The translations under genes and the position numbers were made by a program. Positions 1-30,549 of a stretch of 35,058 bases of DNA are shown here, piece after piece; position 1 is the first letter of the stretch, and every line of letters starts with the position of its first letter. Source of the DNA: Pelomyxa schiedti (lineage: Eukaryota > Protista > Evosea); the NCBI GenBank assembly GCA_020536535.1, contig JAHLWZ010000974.1, positions 1 through 35,058 of the forward strand. The letters are read 5' to 3'. The notes under the pieces are model-generated. The model saw nothing but the letters and a program-made list of their open reading frames with translations. It was not told the DNA's origin and ran no database searches.

Positions 1-315
1 GACTCTGGCTGGCTGCGAATTACGAAGAAGCAACAAAATGATGCTGGGGGGAAAAAAAAAAAGAAGTGACACACTCTCTCCCCAACCCCCCCAAAAAAGA
101 AGGGATTCAACAACAACAGCACACACAACCACACGAAAATCCCACACGAGCAACCCACCCCCTTGCTGCCCAGAGCGTGACACGCCGAACCCCCAACCCC
201 AGACAAAGGCCCAACTTGTCTGGTGGAACTGGGGGTTCGGTGTGCTGCCTTTGGTGTCGCAGGGGGGCTGTTGGGCGGGTTGTCTCAACGGGATTCAAAC
301 CCCCCAAAAAAGGCC

Positions 316-352
<37 letters not shown>

Positions 353-605
353 GGAATCCCACTGAGAGAGTGTGAATGCCAATAAAACCCCCCAAAAAAG
401 AAAGAAGTGCCTGTGTGTGCAAGAACAGTGGCTGACGAAAGGGCCTTTCTCTTCTCTTCTGAACGTGACCACCCAAATTCCAATACAAGCAAACCTCAAC
501 AAAGTGCCACAAGTCACATATTCCATCAGCTGCTGGAACGCACAGTCCCTCACTCACAGACCCGTGTTGCGCACTGCTGCTGTTTGCTACCCCCCCATTG
601 GACAT
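1..605 (-). CDS. Probable 5' part of an intron-containing gene running off the left edge; product unknown
   Basis: Minus-strand ATG at 605 (MSNGGVANSSSAQHG...DLWHFVE, followed by a GTTTGC donor). A strong polypyrimidine acceptor (tttttttttcccccccag) lies at ~43-60, followed by open sequence to the edge. Exon structure not resolved. Confidence 0.35.
318..351. repeat. (GT)17 microsatellite, probably intronic
   Basis: Directly visible perfect dinucleotide run. Confidence 0.95.
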
Positions 606-875
606 TTTATGGCTGGGCCAGTTCCACTTGTTTGATTCCGAGTCCTGTTCTTCTCCACTGTCACCATAACACCAACACACATCCCCAACACATCCCCACA
701 TTGCAGCACACTTGCACATGCCCACAATTGTAATTGTACAGGCTCTCAAAATCTGACAAAATAATTGCCACTTTTTCTGATTTTATTTTTTAAATAGACG
801 AGGTTACAAAGAAATTCTTTGTCTCCTCAACTATGTTACATACAACACTAGTGGAAACAGAATATGCGGTAGTAT

Positions 876-3800
876 CTACATCATTCCGTGCAAATCAGCC
901 TTCTTTGACAAGTGGAGGTAGACTTGTGAGGAGTATGCAGATGAAAACCTCAGCTCTAGCTCCACAGTTTTTGGCCGGAGTGGTTGCAATTCAATGCCAA
1001 TGGTACCAAGCACATCCTTGGCCACTTTCCAGTAACTGCGCATCCCCCAAATACAATGGTTACAATGGTAGACATAATGATGGATATTCGGCGAACCTGG
1101 TATCCTTGAGGAGGTGAATCCACTTCAATTTATCATTCTTGAGAGACACAAGAAGCGGGGGCCGGGTCAGCATCCCTGGCAAAGTGAGAGCTTTATCAGT
1201 AACACCACAATCGGGAGTCTAACCTTCATCATTTACAGAGATACTGCAGGGGAGTGTCCCGCAAAGAAGAAGTAATTCGCTAAGCCAGTGGGTGATAACA
1301 CTATCTTGTCCTGGAATGCTTTGAACATCGAGACAGTTGAGAAGTCTTTCCTCCAGTACTTTGGGATTATGAATTAACTAAAAACCCTGAATTCTGCCAC
1401 TTACCTTGGATAGAAACAACAATGCCACTCTCGTCTGTGACTTCCCACTGCAGACTTTTGTTGTATGACACTGCTTGTTCCAGCTGAGAAACTCTTTTTT
1501 TTGTTGGTAAGAGAACGTGAATGACTCCACGCTTCTGAATACCTGAAGAGTGCATTTTCTGAAAGAAGCCGTTTGTCACCAAAATCTGACACAAAAGCCA
1601 GCTTGGCGGGGATGTCAGATACATTAGCTTTTATCATCATGTAGGTCAAAATAGAGAGCCTATCATCTGGACCCCTAGGTTAGGTAAAACATCCCGTAGT
1701 TGAAACTAATCAAAGTACAATTCGATATGTGGGATGTCAGAGGGAGATGTCTGCTTGTAGAATAGTTCAATATCTTTTTCGATGGCATTTGATGCCCTGC
1801 TGATGCACTCGACCACTGCCTGAATTGAATTGCATCGAGACAACAATCGAAGATGTTTGATTGAAAGACCGTATGGAACACAAGCTGAAAAGATGTTAAA
1901 AATGCAAGCGACGTAAGAAACGCACCAGATTGATCTACGCAGGGGCTCCATAGACTATGCGCTGTTTGAGGGGAATTCGGATTGGAGTAGGACAGCGACT
2001 GTGCAACTGGAGGAGAAGACGGTGTGTGGGTTGGAGTGGTCAGGCAAGTTGGGCTTGGTGTGATGCAGTTTTGTGGTGGAGATGCCTCTAAATGCAGCTG
2101 GGAATTTCTCTCTTCTTGGAAGCCATAACTCGGTAGTCGCCCCTCTTTTGTTGGAACACACGGTGGGGTACCAATCGGGCTCGTCCTTTCAGGTTGCTCG
2201 TCAAGCTGCAGAGGGGGTATTTCTGGAAAGCTGGGACTTTTTGATAAAGTCCGTGGTTCGTAGGGGCTGGAGTTGGTTCCTGGCCAGGAAACAGTATTCT
2301 CAATGGGTTTTGGCATTCTTTGAAAATGAGATTCCTTGTACAAGACGTGAGAACTGGCGTATGAGAAAAGAATGAGCAAGCATACCCATAAGCACAACTT
2401 CCGTGAAACCCCTAGTTCTTTCAAAGATCTCAATCGAAGAGAGTTCAAGTTCATTACGAGAGTCTGAGCTTCCGTTTTGTACTTGTATTTGTAAGATTTA
2501 ACTGATAGAATGTTTGATGGAAACACTGAACTGTTCGTCTGTACAAGGCAAATAAATCTGTTGACACGTTTCCAATAATAACGGTCTTGGTCCAGTGAAC
2601 CCACTCCAACCTTTTGAGAGAATTCAAGGGGCCAAGTAAGCTCTCACAGCATCGAACAATCTGATCTGAGCCAGGTTATTTTTAGCAAAGAAATTAAGCC
2701 ACGAGTTACCAGCAAATGAATTGATATCGTCAATGGCGTCTGCTAAAAGAAGTGCAGCTTCTTTCCTGGGGGTCCCGTGATAACAAACAGTGAAGATGCG
2801 ACTGAACTTGTACACACACTGGCCAAAGGGGTGATTTAAATCACTGGCACTCAAAAGTCAGAGACAGCTTAGAAATTGGGAATAGCAACTTCAATAGAAT
2901 GCAAAAGATGCGTTGGTTTATCTGTTTTTCTGTAAACCTGGAAAGAATGTGATCTGCCCACTTGGAGGGCTAGAAATTGGTAAGCTAAAAAAAAAAACAG
3001 TAAGGGGAAAATACTTTTTGAACTTCCTCGTAAGGGAAATTGAACAAAGCTATTTGCTTATCTTCAGGAATGACAGGGCAAAGAAACCGCCACTTTTGGT
3101 ATCTACCTTCGGGCAGGGAATCTCCTCCTTCTTGGGAAGGGCTACAATAAAGAATGAGTTTATCCAAGTGATTTTTATCGACATAAACCTCTTAATCAAA
3201 GAGCCAGTGATATTAGTTCCATCGAACATTCCAGTGAGAGAATCTCCATTTGGGAAGTGCATTGCTGTGAACTTTCAGTTGATAATTCAACAGTTTCTTA
3301 CAATATACTTCCTTGCCCTTTGGGCTTTCCCTTTGCAAAAATCCCAGAGAAAGTTGTGCCATCTGGTTGGATTGAAACCTGAATGATTACAATTACACCC
3401 TATTTATAGCTATATGGCATACCCCAAATCCATATTTCTGGTGTTACGTAAGGAAAAAAGTAAAGAAAAAAGAACGAACTTCATCTTCACGCCAATGGCC
3501 ATAGTATTGACCCGAACTAGAATACTCAACACCAAAGCCGTTTCGCTAAGGAAATATGAGAACCCAAAGTGCCGAACAGAAGATACCTTGTCATTCAACC
3601 AGGTTCCAGCATAAAGGGCTGTCTGTGTACCCTGGATCAAGTGCAACTCCCCCTTTGCTTTTGTTGGCTGTAAAGCCTGAATTTGGGGGGAAATGCACAC
3701 CAATCCTTGTTTAAGCTGTTTTCCTCCGGACTCGTACAATCCTCCAACATACTTTGCACTCTCATCTACGAGAATCCCTGGAGGAGGATCTTTGTGGGGT

Positions 3801-23771: not shown

Positions 23772-26700
23772 ATGGCCAACTACGAAACGGCTCGGGCGGC
23801 ACTCACACGAGCGCTGATCGATGTCGAACCACTCGATGACTTGTACTTCGATTTGGGTCAGCCTCTGTCCGACAATTTCATGCTTCAACTCGCCGACAAT
23901 CGCGAGTTCATGGACCCTTCGTACTACTACACCGTATGCGACGTGGTGAAGCGTTGCCTTTTCGAAACGCAAGAAATCCAGTTGAGTCCGAAGTTGTCAG
24001 GTTCCTGGTCCACGGCAAATACCAAATACGATCGTTCTAAAATGAAACAGAAATTGGGATGAGTGGTGCCTCGGATTCGTTGTGCCGAGCACTGATGACA
24101 CTGGGAAAGCCCCTCACGGTGGCGGCTCTGAGGGAGGTTCTTTCTCTGCCTGAAATTCCACCTCCACTTTTACATATTTTCAACTCCAAAAAAGGATGGC
24201 TACCGAAGCTTCAGCGAAGATTGGTTCCCATGACTGACCCCGGGGGAACTCCGTCATCCAGCATCGAGTCATTTCCAGGGAAGCTGACCGAGGCAGGATT
24301 CCAGGATTTGGAAGACCTCGTTGGTTTGGATTCTGGTGACTTTCGAACACTCACCGAGGCACTGAGAATTCCAAGGGTATCTGCGAACAAACTGCTGCAG
24401 AAAGCCAAGGACCTCGTTGGAAATGGAAAAAAACCGCTGTGCCTCACACTGGAACACGCAACCGGGATCCACAGCTTGATCACCACCGTCAAAGAGGCAC
24501 ACAATGGAAACACAGTGAACAAGGTCACCCTTGTCACACAGAAGGTTGTGACTCTGATCAACCTGATTTGTAAGGGCAGCTGTTCACCCAGTGGTGACAG
24601 CATTGCCTTTGACAAACTCGATGACTGTTTTGACTTTGTCACCATCGGGCTTTTTGGTGACCTCACATTGATCACCAAGTTCCTGGTGCGAATTGGTGCT
24701 TTTCCTCCAGACAAAGAACTGCCTGAGAATAGGGGCCAGGCAGAGATACACGCCTTCATCACCCAATTTGAGGAATGTTCTGAAATGAGAGGAAAGTCGG
24801 TGATGATCCTTGTCTTTGCTCCAGGGAGCACAAGCTTTTCCAACGTTCAGGAGTCTGACCCGGCATGCCTCTCTCTGCGACTTCTTTACAGCCTCTGTGA
24901 CAGGATTTTCATGTGCTTGTCTGAGGTAATGCTCAGCGAAATTCAACAAAGAAGAGGAGAGGCCGAAACAACAAGGGCTGTTAAAGGTGAGGTCGAGAAG
25001 AGGGCAATCAAAAAAGACAGGTGTGAGTTCCGGAAAGGCTTTGCTCAGAACATTACCCTCCCACCATCAGATTCACCTTGGACAATGATCCAAGGTGAAA
25101 ACAGGGTTGGTTTTGTCTATTGGGAGGAAACCAATGAAAGCACATTGCCCTCCCCACTCAGAGGCCAGATTCCAGCTTATTGCTTTTCCTCACACTTCAA
25201 GGATTTGTTGGAGGGGAGGGAGCTGTGCACTGATACCCTCCCTTATCGCAACAGGTTGGCACTCCTTCAGTTGCTGAATCCCACTGCTGCCCAAGCCCTT
25301 GAAGATGGAAGCAAGGGGCCGATCAAGAATCTTCAGAGGGTCGCAAAGGATCAAATGAAACTGATACTCATGAGATACTTCAGGCACGAGTGGGACCTGT
25401 TGCAACTTGAGGCACCTTGTTCCCCAAGCGATTGTTGTGCTGACCTGGACACATCCAGGCTGAGAGATAACATCAATACATGCCTTTCCAAGACAACGTC
25501 TGTTGTAGTTCTCTTTGAGGAGTTTTGCCCCAAAAAAACTGAAAGTCAACTGAGTGATTTCTTGAGTCTCACAGAACATGAAATGAAACAAAGAATCACT
25601 CAATCTGTGAGTGACCCACCAAGACCCCACATTCCACTTTCCTCTGTTTCATCCTTGGGGTTTGACCCACATTTCATTTCTGAAATCACTTCCATGTTGA
25701 AAAAGAAGTTTATATCTCAGTGTGAAGCGCTCATTACAGAAATTGAAGATATGGTGTGGTGCAACCCTGATGAATTTTGCAGTGGGTCACCATTTTCTTT
25801 GGAGCTTGACATCGCGATTCGCAAAGAGACCCCACACACAAAACCGGAAAAAGCGATCCTGACAATGTTAGACGTTGGGGACAAGGCAAACCCACAATTC
25901 ACCCTGATCATGGAGATGTCTGGAAAAGTTCCACGGCACTTGAAGTTCACAGTTGTGGAACTGAGTTTGAAGACGACTGATGTACGTTCTTATTTCGCTC
26001 CCGCACCTCCCTTATGTTTTTGTTTGGACCTGGCGGCTGTTTTTGGTTGTTTCCTCTTGCCTGAAGGCAAGGTGATGGTTTTTGGTGTTGACACTGCCGA
26101 CCCTTCAAATTACCTCATCTGCATACACCAAGAGAGCACACGCTCCCTCAGTTCGAAACTGCCAAATCAAGGTTGCATTTCCCATGTCAACTTTTGTGCA
26201 GCAACGAGAATGCTGGTGATGTGTTACTCATCGCCCGACTACAGTGTCTGTGCTTTGAAATTCAACGGCTCGTATTCGAAGTATGACAGCCTGGGTAATT
26301 TCTCAATTGTTGATGATGCCGCTCTTGCGAGTGTGAATGGAATTTTCCCGGTTCCAGAAGGGCAAAAGGTTGTGGTCACATTCCAAACAGTGGCCAAGCT
26401 CTTTGACTTCGAGCACAGAACCATTTCCAGGATGCCACAATTTGATGGACCTGCACTTTTCCTCGGTCCGGAATTCTTCGTCACTGTGAAACCATCACCT
26501 GAGGGGGAATCGTGCGTTGTTTCTGTGAGGAGTTGCCTGCCACCCTACGATGTTCAGCACTGGGAAACAAACCTCCTGAACCCACACCTGTTGCCATCAA
26601 CACTTCTGGCAAATTTTCAGGTTGGTGGTGGGGACGGGGCACCACCAGATTTGCAGCTGGTACAGTTCAACCCCACCTCCCGTCACGTTTCCACAGTGGT

Positions 26701-29700
26701 CTTGCGTGCTTCGATGAAGCAGCCAAAATTCTCGCTGCAGATGACCTCACAACCAAGTTGCCCTTCCTGCCTGCCCGATTACGTGCCTCTTATGTTAAGC
26801 AAGTTCCCAATCACAGCCGTTTGTGATATTGCATCGGAAGCGAAAACACACAAGTTGACAGTCATTGTCCCATCAGCAACACCCGAAGCAAAGAGACTGG
26901 TCTCCATGCGTTTCGGGGAATACAGAGAGAAGTTTGTTGGTCTTTTCGAAACACCTGGCACAGCTGACAAGTTCTTCACGGAACCTGTGACTTGCATAGA
27001 GCAAGGATGGATTGAGACGGAACCACTCCAACCAACAGGGTTTGGAACGTGGCTGAAAACACTCATTTCACTCGTTCCCGTCCAAATCGCCCGTGTTGAC
27101 AACAACTGTTTGGTGTTGTGCAACAACAAGAGTTCTTCACAGGGAAAAGATATGATTCAATTCGCACAAACCCAGCACAGTGTTGCAGAGGGAATTTCGT
27201 TTGGACTCCTCGACGCGATTTTCTCGTCATGCTTCAACAAACCAGTTCTTGTTGTCACATCGATGGGAAAACAGAGCACAGGGAAGAGTTACACTCTCAA
27301 CCACCTCTTGGGTGTTCTCTTTGACATCTCTGGTGGGAGGTGCACTGATGGTTGTTGGATGAGTGTTCGCGAGTATTCGGATTGCTTGATTGTGGCTTTG
27401 GATTTTGAAGAACTTTGCTCTCCAGAGCGTTCCGAACAGGAAGACATTCTCCTTTCTGTGTTGAACGCATCAGTTTCTAACTTGACACTTTTCAAGACTG
27501 AATTTACAATTGATCGAGAGACAGAAAGAATGTTCAGGAACTTCCAGGAAGGGGTTGGAATGCTGAAAGGGGATGACAAACTCTTCAAGGGTTGTTTCAC
27601 TCTCATGGTAAAAGATGTTTCTGAAAGGGACATTGAAAGCTTATTCTCAGAATTCAAGACCAAGTTTTTTAATATTGTGGAAACAAACCAGGGACAAAAC
27701 TTCTTTTCTCAAATGTTTCCAGGGGAATTCACAATGATTATGTGTTCCCCACTTGGAACATCTGGCTATACTGAGAGTTTGCGGGGCTGTGCCGAAATAC
27801 TTCAGAAGCAAACACCACAGTTCCACAGTGGAGGAGAGTTCTCCTCGATGCTCAAACTGATTCTCGCGAAGTTGCACTTGAAAGACTGGTCTTCCCTCTT
27901 GGGAAAAGACATGGTGATTGTGGTTCGAATGCTCCAAGAACAGCTCCCTTGGGCAGTTGCTTTCGGGAGAAAGTCAGCAGCCATTGGCCACCAGGGGCAA
28001 CTGGTGAATTTGTCAACAGGGGAAGTTGTTTCCCGCTCGGAATCAGTCACAGTCTCTGGCCTAAGCATTCCCATTCCGAACTTCAATCTGCAAGCAGACC
28101 ACGAGGCAGATTTCACCAGGATAAGAGACGAGTTCAAGTCTTGCTTTCAGCAAAATCTTTCAACACCAGCGAAGCAGGCCGACTTCAAATCATGGCACAG
28201 ACAATTCAGGAGTTTTGTGCACCAAGTCATTGAGAGCAGGAAGAGGCATGTGAGAGATTGGGTCTGTTCAAATACGAACAAGTCCCCTTGTTCTCAGCAC
28301 GATTTCCCCACAGAAGTTTCCCCTGCCTCTGGTACCCCACCTCAGAGTGAATACCCTGAAGTCAAAGAATTTTGGAAGACAGTAGACTCCTCGTTGCGGC
28401 AACTGGATGCACTCGAGGTTTGTTCAGACACGTGCACTCGGTGTCGGTTGCCGTGTTTACTTCTGTCTGGGCATTCAGCACAACACAATTGCAATGGATC
28501 TCACAAGTGCGAAGCAGAGTGCACTTATTGCAGGTCCGCGGGCAGATGCGCGTATCAGGCTGGTCATGAAGGTGATCACGACTGCACAAGAGGTCACAAA
28601 TGCAGCAAGGAGTGCACTCTCTCGAGCAAAACACGTTGCAACAAATTCTGCTCTCTTGTGGTCAATCATGCTGGTCCGTGCATGTGCAATTCGCAGCAAC
28701 ACCTGTGTGGTGAGGCATGTTCTTCTCGGGGACCAAAAGAACCCTGTGGCAAGCCGTGCACGCTCCCTGGCGGTGATCATCAACAACATCACTGTGGATG
28801 GAGGCACTGCCTTCACAGTTGCAGCTTCCCAAAGTGTACAAATCAGTGTGCTTCGGAAGACCATTTTCATGGAGACGATTCCTCGGCTTCCTCCTTCCTG
28901 CACGCGTGTGGCAAAGAGCACGCGTGTCCGGCAGAGTGCAAGATGCCTGGCTGGTGCCTTGTTGAATATATTCAGAAGGTGGAAAGGTTTTCATACAATG
29001 GCCGAAGGCAAAATTTTGTTTACGAGAGATCCACTGTTCCAGAACCAAGAAAGCTCCTTTGCTGCAAAAGGGTGCCACCAGGGCAGCAATTCCATGAGGG
29101 CTCTCACTCTTGCACTTATCCACAATCTGACCATTGTTGCGAAAGCTCATGCCCAACATGTGGTTATATTTGTGAATTACCTTTCGGACACCCTGGCAAG
29201 CATGCAGCGGCACACGGAAACATGATCAAAACACAATTTGTTTCCAGTGGCAAAGACATTAACGTTGATGGGCGTTTGTATGAAGCTGGTGAGCCAGGGG
29301 TGGCCGAACTCTGCAACTTGTTCTGCAACAAACTTGGCAGGCACATTCACATCCTCCCGTGCACGGCGGGTGGCAATGCACCCTGTACTCGCACTGGAGA
29401 AGGAGGCATAAGGCACGCCACCGCTACGTACTTGCCGAATCCAGATACTCCAAAGGATGAGCTGACACACGAAGGGTACTGGAATGCAATTAACTTCCGT
29501 GATCCTTGCACGCCCGAACACAGGGAGGTTTTCAAATTGTGCAACTTCCAGTGTACCGACAATTCTCACTCGAATGCCCGGTGCCGGTGCATGCTTCCTC
29601 TTTGGCATGCACCTTGTGCCTTACAAGCCAACGAACAGCAACAGTTTGCAGGTGAAAAAGTTGGATACGCCACATCAGATGGACACATATTCCCCAAAAA

Positions 29701-30549
29701 GCATGGTCCCCCGGAAAACATTCACATCGTTTTCTGCCTCGACATCTCCACATCCATGTTGAGACGCAACAGGTGGGAAACTCTTAAGAGAGGTGTTGAA
29801 CATTTCATTTATTCCAGAAGCAAACCAGACGATGTTTACAGCATTGTTCTGTTCCACAGTAACGGATTTCTCGTATGTGACAGGGGGTCACCTACTGCGG
29901 TCCGATATTACCTGGATAGGAAACCTAAATCTGCGCAACACAGGAAGTTTTCAAGCGGTCTATCAGTCGCGTATCGAAAGTTGATGGATACTAACTGGTG
30001 CGTTTTTGACGGCTTTCTTTCTCTTTTGCCGTTGTGTGTTGCCCACCAAAAACAAAAAGGTTGGAGTACCGGGCTGCTCTCATATTTATGTCCTGTGGAG
30101 AGGATGAGAACTCAGAATGGGAAACCTGGATGCTGAACATCAAGCACCTCGCACAGGCAAAACCGGTTTCAACTTTCGTGATTGGAATCGGTGATGGCTT
30201 CAATGTCAAAAAGCTTCGAAGTGTTGCCGAAACCGGGGACGCCCATTTCCTCACAGTCAACGCTGTGTGTGAAAATCTGGCCTCAGTGTTAAACAGAATA
30301 GACGCCGAGGCGCAACTGGTGGCTCTGGTGCCCATCCCCCCCACTGCACAACAGCTCAGTGTTGTCCAAACTGAAGCCGCCGTATGTGCCTATCAGCCAA
30401 AGGTGTGGCGAAGCGTAGACTCCAAGGCTGGGAAACAAGGGACTCCATGGGCATTACATTCACAATTTTATGTGGAGATAGACAAGAACGAATTCAGCTC
30501 TCGTTTGCTCTATAATACGGCGAGGGTTACAACACCAAAAAGCTGCTGA
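23772..30549 (+). CDS. Giant (~2221 aa) GBP/VLIG-type large GTPase with N-terminal SAM-like segment, Cys/His-rich repeat array and C-terminal VWA domain; exons 23772-24000, 24051-29997, 30060-30549
   Basis: Two GT-AG introns join three ORFs in frame (total 6666 nt). G1 MGKQSTGKS (27263-27289), G2 RCTDGCWM, G3 DFEE (27401-27412), ERSEQED, G4-like VKDV. C-x3-C/H-x-C array at ~28420-29620. VWA HIVFCLDISTS (DISTS at 29741-29755), VYSIVLF, LIFMSCG, FVIGIG. The 3' end is uncertain. Confidence 0.85.
24001..24050 (+). other. Intron 1 of the giant GTPase gene (50 nt)
   Basis: CAG|GTTCCT...TTCTAA...ACAG|AA. Splicing gives PKLS-E-IGMSGASD, in frame with the 2025-aa ORF. Confidence 0.8.
29998..30059 (+). 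other. Intron 2 of the giant GTPase gene (62 nt), within the VWA domain
   Basis: TG|GTGCGT...AAAG|G. Splicing gives DTNW-LEYRAALIFMSCG and completes the VWA fold. Confidence 0.85.

What the first reader, a model, noticed from the sequence alone, without database searches (positions are those of the whole stretch)
23772..30549. Giant SAM-like / GBP-VLIG GTPase / Cys-His array / VWA protein: candidate cell-autonomous defence sensor-effector
Seen: a ~2221-aa protein with a SAM-like segment (KLTEAGFQDLEDLVGLDSGDFRTLTEALRIPRVSANKLL), a ~1000-aa unassigned region that is partly beta-rich, a P-loop domain with GKQSTGKS / RCTxGxW / DFEx / VKD motifs, a helical stalk, ~400 aa of Cys/His repeats and a VWA domain. 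Established: these GTPase motifs typify the GB1/RHD3 (GBP, atlastin, VLIG/GVIN1-URGCP) clade, whose GBP and GVIN members are infection-induced in animals. Inference: this is a poorly characterised protist innate-immunity-type polymerising GTPase, in which the repeats and VWA could act as ligand-sensing modules.
Basis: partly seen in the sequence, partly recalled or inferred. Interest (0 to 1): 0.85.

Follow-up and report, generated by a model that had tools for sequence, protein, structure and literature searches.

The report
Giant double-GTPase protein with nested propeller
This amoeba gene belongs to a large, apparently unstudied family of giant GBP-like GTPases found patchily from sponges to ferns and fungi, in which a dead GTPase domain carrying an inserted beta-propeller precedes a working one; a defence role is plausible but untested, and this particular copy has lost key catalytic and metal-binding residues.

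Summary
The gene is real: three exons, 2,221 aa, in Pelomyxa schiedti, deposited as KAH3743637.1 under a misleading name and with the Cys/His region in the wrong frame. The 'unassigned 1,000 aa' resolve, by structure model and language-model search, into a GB1/RHD3-fold pseudo-GTPase without a P-loop, into which a beta-propeller is inserted, itself interrupted by a helical bundle. A GB1/RHD3 GTPase, stalk, seven Cys/His repeats, a conserved Cys/His domain and a VWA domain follow. This core is kept in 108 of 132 full-length relatives (amoebae, algae, land plants, fungi, oomycetes, sponges). The GTPase forms its own clade (97/97), apart from VLIG/URGCP and RHD3, which have separate genes in this genome. 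There are 13 copies here, 7 intact and 6 broken, under purifying selection. This copy alone lacks the G3 glycine and two MIDAS ligands. A defence role is inferred (about 50%); no expression or reads data were obtained. The scan noted arrays of such GTPases before on other DNA of this genome (s1-411773, s1-589670); the pseudo-GTPase/propeller anatomy was not in the notes I saw.

The parts
23772..24000 (+). Exon 1 (76 aa), helical, unassigned; conserved among paralogues only
24001..24050 (+). Intron 1 (GT-AG, 50 nt)
24051..29997 (+). Exon 2 (5,947 nt, one open frame)
24251..24418 (+). SAM-like five-helix domain
   Evidence: model helices 8-63, pLDDT 57-78; HMM-HMM match to a Pfam-positive SAM of a relative, E 6e-5; no direct Pfam hit
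24464..25003 (+). Pseudo-GTPase domain, first part: GB1/RHD3 fold with the P-loop shortened (GLFG followed directly by helix; no GxxxxGKS)
   Evidence: VIA match to Sey1p GTPase 5ca8, Z 13.5, rmsd 3.9, 208 aligned, model 79..936; ESM feature hits all GBP/RHD3-type, 0.84-0.88; same order of strands and helices as the true G domain; P-loop survey
25004..26728 (+). Beta-propeller (irregular, six or seven blades) inserted into the pseudo-GTPase
   Evidence: VIA Z 12-14.6 to NHL, CyRPA, WD40 and Kelch propellers over model 259-833; Foldseek; weak WD40 hits by profile
25175..25828 (+). Helical bundle inserted into the propeller after its first blade
   Evidence: model helices 316-533
26729..26977 (+). 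Pseudo-GTPase domain, second part (helix-strand-helix; in register with the G4-strand region of the true G domain)
   Evidence: in-register but non-significant HMM-HMM alignment, E 0.17
27041..27889 (+). GB1/RHD3-type GTPase domain with G1, G2 and G4 intact
   Evidence: profile hits GBP5 E 3e-11, Sey1 2e-9; Foldseek GBP1 E 3e-12; VIA Z 20-21 to Sey1p, GBP1, atlastin, SMG9
27410..27412 (+). G3 glycine codon changed to glutamate (GAA; GGN in all seven other copies compared)
   Evidence: Gly kept in 110 of 113 family rows
27905..28414 (+). Helical stalk, aligned with the GBP1/Sey1p middle domain
28421..29227 (+). Seven Cys/His repeats (unit about HxCxxxC..C.....HxxxHxC), with a long beta-hairpin inserted in unit 6; probable zinc array; no Pfam match
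29228..29707 (+). Conserved non-repetitive Cys/His domain with invariant His and Cys residues; no known match
   Evidence: invariant columns of alignment A2
29714..29997 (+). VWA domain, first half: DxSxS intact, MIDAS Thr replaced by Arg
29998..30059 (+). Intron 2 (GT-AG, 62 nt)
30060..30321 (+). VWA domain, second half: last MIDAS Asp replaced by Cys
30322..30549 (+). Unconserved C-terminal tail to the stop; differs in every paralogue; no membrane helix or CaaX box

Best explanation
The gene is one paralogue of an old, eukaryote-wide but patchy subfamily of GB1/RHD3 GTPases built as pseudo-GTPase (with nested beta-propeller and helical bundle) + active GTPase + stalk + zinc array + VWA. SHOWN: architecture, family, clade, copy number, motif states. 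INFERRED, by analogy with GBP1, atlastin and GVIN1: soluble family members bind a target through the propeller, zinc array and MIDAS-bearing VWA; GTP binding lets the active G domains dimerise, the stalk swings, and the proteins assemble on the target; the pseudo-G domain is a nucleotide-free partner or lid, as SMG8 is for SMG9, that couples propeller binding to the active site. The most likely role is cell-autonomous surveillance or defence against intracellular microbes (in Pelomyxa, ingested bacteria or its endosymbionts). This copy, with G3 Gly>Glu and a remodelled, metal-free VWA face in an otherwise conserved frame, is most likely a hydrolysis-impaired variant (regulator, decoy or altered specificity) rather than a standard member.
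For: Closest characterised relatives of the active G domain include VLIG/GVIN (HMM-HMM prob. 99.2, E 8e-20) and GBPs; GVIN1 has two large-GTPase domains and coats bacteria (10.1101/2025.03.24.645074), and the region before the VLIG G domain also looks like a degenerate G domain (E 7e-4). 13 copies in tandem arrays with 6 broken. Fixed core in 108 of 132 full-length relatives with variable ends: SAM+C2, B-boxes, ankyrin with a weak CARD-like hit, ADP-ribosyltransferase, kinase-like, triple AAA. Paralogue sets also in Sycon, Cryptomeria, Mesostigma, Phytophthora. No membrane anchor. Fastest window (dN/dS 0.83) lies in the propeller, slowest (0.08) at G1-G3. Private changes of this copy cluster in the VWA (10/59 against 10/206, Fisher p 0.004) while its G domain has only 2/224. 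NRAS G60E, the same substitution, raises GTP loading (PMC6813200).
Against: No member has a tested function in the papers I could search. No expression data. No window with dN/dS above 1. The GB1/RHD3 clade also holds housekeeping members (atlastin, Sey1p, RNF112, SMG8/9) that match the fold equally well. Grouping with VLIG has weak support (85/37). The pseudo-G call rests on a predicted model and sub-0.9 language-model scores; sequence-profile support is not significant. No PADLOC match.
Confidence: 0.5

Rival explanations
1. RNA or protein surveillance scaffold of the SMG8-SMG9 type: the pseudo-G and active G domains form a stable intramolecular pseudo-dimer that does not polymerise; propeller and zinc array bind RNA, poly-ADP-ribose or ubiquitin and bring in appended enzymes.
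For: SMG9 matches the G domain as well as GBP1 does (Z 20.1); SMG8-SMG9 is a dead+live G-domain pair (PMC5473137); best propeller matches are RNA-binding NHL domains, though tied with many others; relatives carry ADP-ribosyltransferase or, in a public model, a 3'-5' exonuclease after the VWA.
Against: Propeller Z values are tied across unrelated families; the stalk is GBP/Sey1p-like; copy turnover is unlike that of single-copy decay factors; the two G domains were modelled separately, so their contact is untested.
Confidence: 0.17
2. Housekeeping membrane or cytoskeletal remodeller (tether, vacuole or phagosome shaping), recruited through propeller and VWA in place of a membrane anchor.
For: Fold shared with Sey1p, atlastin and RNF112; purifying selection throughout; very conserved core over a wide range of eukaryotes.
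Against: No membrane helix or CaaX; separate RHD3 genes exist in this genome; own clade; about half of the copies are broken; variable terminal domains.
Confidence: 0.18
3. This particular copy is a young, decaying duplicate (or the G3 change is an amplification or assembly error), whatever the family does.
For: It sits alone on its contig, away from the arrays; 6 of 13 copies are broken; three family-invariant residues are lost; the G3 change is a single G>A in a single-cell assembly (PMC8887013).
Against: 6.6 kb of open frame; dN/dS against its closest paralogue is 0.13 in the G domain and 0.25-0.44 elsewhere before the VWA; the MIDAS changes are multi-base and clustered, which neutral decay or a read error would not give.
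Confidence: 0.15

Closest known systems
VLIG family: GVIN1 / URGCP (Pfam PF25683, PF25496)
   Same: Very large, nearly single-exon GB1/RHD3 GTPases; G1 GxQSxGKS and G2 RCT; a degenerate G domain before the active one; patchy, expanded families.
   Different: Below the PF25683 cut-off (35.9 against 55 bits, only G1-G2 matched); separate clade; no PF25496 match; propeller insert, zinc array and VWA are absent from the VLIG proteins scanned; true VLIG genes exist elsewhere in this genome.
Guanylate-binding proteins (GBP1, 2, 5)
   Same: G-domain fold and helical stalk (Foldseek E 3e-12; Z about 21).
   Different: No P-loop arginine (Q in its place), no CaaX, almost four times longer, below the PF02263 cut-off for this protein.
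RHD3/Sey1p and atlastin
   Same: Fold (Z 20-21); G1 GxQSxGKS as in RHD3; ER..ED motif after G3.
   Different: No transmembrane hairpin; separate clade; multi-copy; real RHD3 genes on contigs C573 and C79.
SMG8-SMG9
   Same: One nucleotide-free and one nucleotide-binding G domain of the same fold (PMC5473137).
   Different: Two chains, single-copy decay factors; here one chain with a propeller nested in the dead domain.
Database label 'VWFA domain-containing' or 'VLIG-type G domain-containing protein' of fungi, oomycetes and algae; 'E3 ubiquitin-protein ligase TRIP12' in Pelomyxa
   Same: These are the same family.
   Different: The labels name one domain only; no HECT or glucosyltransferase domain was found, so the Pelomyxa names look like transferred mis-annotations.

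Membership tests
GB1/RHD3 GTPases | Large G-domain fold with N-terminal extension, followed by a helical stalk | tested here: met
GB1/RHD3 GTPases | G1, G2 Thr and G4 (x-D after the fifth strand) | tested here: met
GB1/RHD3 GTPases | G3 DxxG | tested here: not met
   DFEE in this copy; met in the family (110 of 113 rows) and in all seven other copies compared
GB1/RHD3 GTPases | GTP hydrolysis and G-domain dimerisation | not testable with these tools
   needs biochemistry
VLIG (GVIN1/URGCP) | PF25683 above the curated cut-off | tested here: not met
   35.9 bits against 55; three other loci of this genome score 95-176
VLIG (GVIN1/URGCP) | Nests within the VLIG clade | tested here: not met
   family 97/97, VLIG 88/87, sister relation only 85/37; 128 columns, three outgroup rows
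VLIG (GVIN1/URGCP) | Two large-GTPase domains in tandem | tested here: met
   homology of the two first domains is not significant (E 0.17)
VLIG (GVIN1/URGCP) | Infection or interferon induction, coat formation | not testable with these tools
GBP | P-loop arginine finger (GxxRxGKS) and PF02263 above cut-off | tested here: not met
   GKQSTGKS; 13.7 against 21.1 bits; some paralogues pass marginally on G1-G3 alone
RHD3/Sey1p/atlastin | C-terminal transmembrane hairpin | tested here: not met
   hydropathy scan; the one peak is a propeller strand in the model
RHD3/Sey1p/atlastin | Groups with RHD3; PF05879 above cut-off | tested here: not met
VWA domain | Fold and family match | tested here: met
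   Z 12.4, rmsd 1.7 to 4rck for the first half; paralogue above Pfam cut-off
VWA domain | Complete MIDAS (DxSxS, T, D) | tested here: not met
   T>R and D>C here; T in 124 and D in 136 of 142 family rows
SAM domain | Five-helix fold and profile match | tested here: inconclusive
NF-X1 or PBZ zinc fingers | Pfam match of the Cys/His repeats | tested here: not met
   no hit at E 10; no usable Atlas hit

The most novel reading that the evidence does not exclude
An ancient, overlooked class of eukaryotic cell-autonomous defence GTPases, parallel to GBP and GVIN, present from amoebae and algae to ferns, conifers, fungi and sponges, in which a sensor propeller nested inside a dead G domain gates an adjacent live GTPase, and in which hydrolysis-dead, MIDAS-less paralogues like this one act as decoys or regulators.
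Probability: 0.3. Interest if true: 0.85.

Novelty: new variant of a known kind. Interest (0 to 1): 0.62.

Why it matters
It defines a further branch of the GBP/atlastin/VLIG group with a three-level nested domain (pseudo-GTPase, propeller, helical bundle) that I did not find described. If it acts in defence, GBP-like coat immunity would be much older and wider than the animal interferon system and could be tested in fungi, oomycetes, red algae and liverworts. It also suggests that the dead+live G-domain tandem of GVIN1/URGCP is a recurring design. At the least it corrects the names and gene models of many deposited proteins.

Tried and rejected
I took no contig for human. The spliced model was never searched joined: all searches and both structure models used single exons by reference, so the modelled VWA is only its first half. 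For the tree, three intron-containing outgroup rows were read locally with X at the breaks. Rejected: the public model's three extra introns in the Cys/His region (they shift the frame; distant relatives and six paralogues align through the open frame); the names TRIP12 and sterol glucosyltransferase (no such domains); membership of VLIG, GBP or RHD3; tandem extra SAM repeats in exon 1 and the start of exon 2 (not significant); bacterial or viral origin (no relative in 185,579 genomes or IMG/VR at pattern-scan sensitivity); positive selection (no window above 1; simple Nei-Gojobori counts only). HMM-HMM comparison of pseudo-G with the family's own G domain was in register but not significant. 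Nine paper searches found no study of the family; subscription journals are mostly outside that library.
Full report
OBSERVATION. Exon 2 is one open frame of 5.9 kb. With GT-AG introns at 24001-24050 and 29998-30059 the gene runs from ATG 23772 to the stop at 30549 and encodes 2,221 aa (arithmetic). The genome has 52.37 Mb in 5,337 contigs, the figures of the Pelomyxa schiedti single-cell assembly (PMC8887013), and the deposited protein KAH3743637.1 comes from this contig. The spliced model was searched exon by exon only.

THE ACTIVE GTPASE HALF. A model of exon-2 residues 985-1981 from 113 sequences has mean pLDDT 87. It matches GBP1, GBP2, GBP5, Sey1p, atlastins, RNF112 and SMG9 about equally (Foldseek E 3e-12 for GBP1; Z 20-21 over about 240 residues, stalk included for GBP1 and Sey1p). 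Pfam scores stay under the cut-offs of URGCP_GTPase, RHD3 and GBP, whereas the genome holds separate genes well above the URGCP, RHD3 and GBP cut-offs. In a tree of the G1-G3 core (47 rows, 128 columns) the family is one side of a 97/97 branch, VLIG of an 88/87 branch, and their grouping has only 85/37 (only three outgroup rows, the GBP row on a long branch). So it is a distinct GB1/RHD3 subfamily, perhaps nearest VLIG (HMM-HMM E 8e-20). After the stalk come seven Cys/His units, a conserved non-repetitive Cys/His domain and the VWA; the first two have no Pfam or Atlas match.

THE 'UNASSIGNED' HALF. A model of exon-2 residues 60-1000 from 77 sequences (pLDDT 80, pTM 0.54) shows a five-helix SAM-like bundle, an alpha/beta domain, a propeller and a helical bundle. 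The wide structural search gives propellers for model residues 259-833 (Z 12-14.6) and, among them, the Sey1p GTPase domain (Z 13.5, rmsd 3.9, 208 residues, model 79..936, chain 27..283). The language-model search of residues 130-330 independently returns GBP/RHD3-type G domains for all named hits (0.84-0.88, lead level). The strands and helices follow the order of the protein's own G domain, and the best HMM-HMM alignments put the G1 strand and the G4-strand region in register, though not significantly. The P-loop is shortened across the family; only 2 of 115 rows have any GxxxxGK[ST] in the domain. I read this as a pseudo-GTPase split by a propeller that is itself split by a helical bundle (about 85% confident). 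GVIN1 is also predicted to have two large-GTPase domains (10.1101/2025.03.24.645074), and the region before the G domain of VLIG proteins gives a weak G-domain signal without a P-loop (E 7e-4); whether the two tandems share one origin is open.

FAMILY. 370 clusters at E 1e-30 or better. Of 132 relatives of 1,700 aa or more, 108 have all six core parts. Named members come from Amoebozoa, a euglenid, a dinoflagellate, a foraminiferan, oomycetes, a glaucophyte, red and green algae, a liverwort, a fern, a conifer, basidiomycetes, Glomeromycota, Endogone, sponges and an acoel; several are transcript-derived, so the family is expressed elsewhere. None was found in bacteria, archaea or viruses at pattern-scan sensitivity. 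The N-terminal extension runs from 0 to about 1,500 aa and may hold SAM+C2, B-boxes or ankyrins with a weak CARD-like hit; a few members add an ADP-ribosyltransferase, a kinase-like domain or three AAA domains after the VWA.

COPIES IN PELOMYXA. Thirteen loci: C505 (4, tandem), C900 (5, tandem), C22 (2), C402 (1) and this one. Seven have an intact frame; six have frameshifts, deletions or inversions. Among six close copies dN/dS is 0.08-0.54 in 50-codon windows, with one window of 0.83 in the propeller and none above 1. This copy is closest to the last C505 copy along nearly all its length. It alone has G3 Gly>Glu, a single G>A (Gly in 110 of 113 family rows), and MIDAS Thr>Arg and Asp>Cys (T in 124, D in 136 of 142 rows). 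Its private changes are concentrated in the VWA (10/59 against 10/206 in the others, p 0.004) while the G domain has 2/224.

MECHANISM. Established knowledge: GB1/RHD3 GTPases dimerise through their G domains on GTP binding and move their stalks; GBP1 and GVIN1 use this to coat bacteria; SMG8-SMG9 pairs a nucleotide-free with a nucleotide-binding G domain (PMC5473137); the G3 glycine amide contacts the gamma-phosphate, and NRAS G60E accumulates GTP (PMC6813200). Inference: intact members are soluble target-binding GTPase assemblies in which the propeller, zinc array and VWA choose the target and the pseudo-G couples binding to the active site. Birth-and-death arrays, swapped terminal domains, patchy range, lack of a membrane anchor and kinship with VLIG and GBP make surveillance or defence the best guess (0.5). 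Rivals are an SMG8/9-like RNA or protein surveillance scaffold (0.17), a housekeeping remodeller (0.18) and, for this copy, decay or an error at G3 (0.15). Nothing here shows induction, localisation or activity.

NOVELTY AND VERDICT. The proteins are in databases under one-domain labels; nine searches of the paper library found no study of the family. The scan had noted such arrays on other DNA of this genome and the DFEE motif in this window; I tested arrays and motif myself. What this follow-up adds is the nested pseudo-GTPase/propeller anatomy, the separate clade, the wide range, and the joint loss of G3 and MIDAS in this copy. New variant of a known kind; interest 0.62.

Noticed in passing
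The 500 bases upstream have no match in the paralogue regions, so this copy sits in a new context.
   Followed up: partly
L021/L022, G000:C505:190200-193700: The public model of the closest paralogue (P0002, 2,578 aa) continues past VWA and a Ser/Thr linker into a 3'-5' exonuclease domain (PF01612); real fusion or merged gene models, not resolved.
   Followed up: partly
L036 (G000:C802:119004-125756), L037 (C769), L038 (C454), L039 (C1219): Bona fide VLIG/URGCP-type GTPase genes of Pelomyxa, one with a 2,250-aa open frame, grouping with Daphnia, rotifer, oomycete and fern VLIGs.
   Followed up: partly
G000:C900:34600-37674 (minus strand): Two open frames, one starting like the endonuclease of a non-LTR retroelement, between two copies of the array.
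   Followed up: no
G000:C402:3537-7510 and C505:165646-165735: Broken copies with internal inversions of the Cys/His repeat region.
   Followed up: no
window 30514-30544: The end of the tail resembles, in another frame, a short piece of the VWA coding sequence of the paralogues (blastn E 0.004): perhaps a duplication remnant.
   Followed up: partly
P0109 (Oscarella lobularis), P0158 (Entosiphon sulcatum), P0016 (Mesostigma), P0069 (Lagenidium): Relatives with ankyrin/B-box and a weak CARD-like N-terminus, a C-terminal ADP-ribosyltransferase (transcript-derived), three C-terminal AAA domains, or an extra GTPase piece at the N-terminus.
   Followed up: partly
window 29228-29707: Non-repetitive domain between the repeats and the VWA with invariant His-x-His and further invariant Cys/His; confidently modelled but unmatched; could be a metal site worth folding alone.
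   Followed up: no
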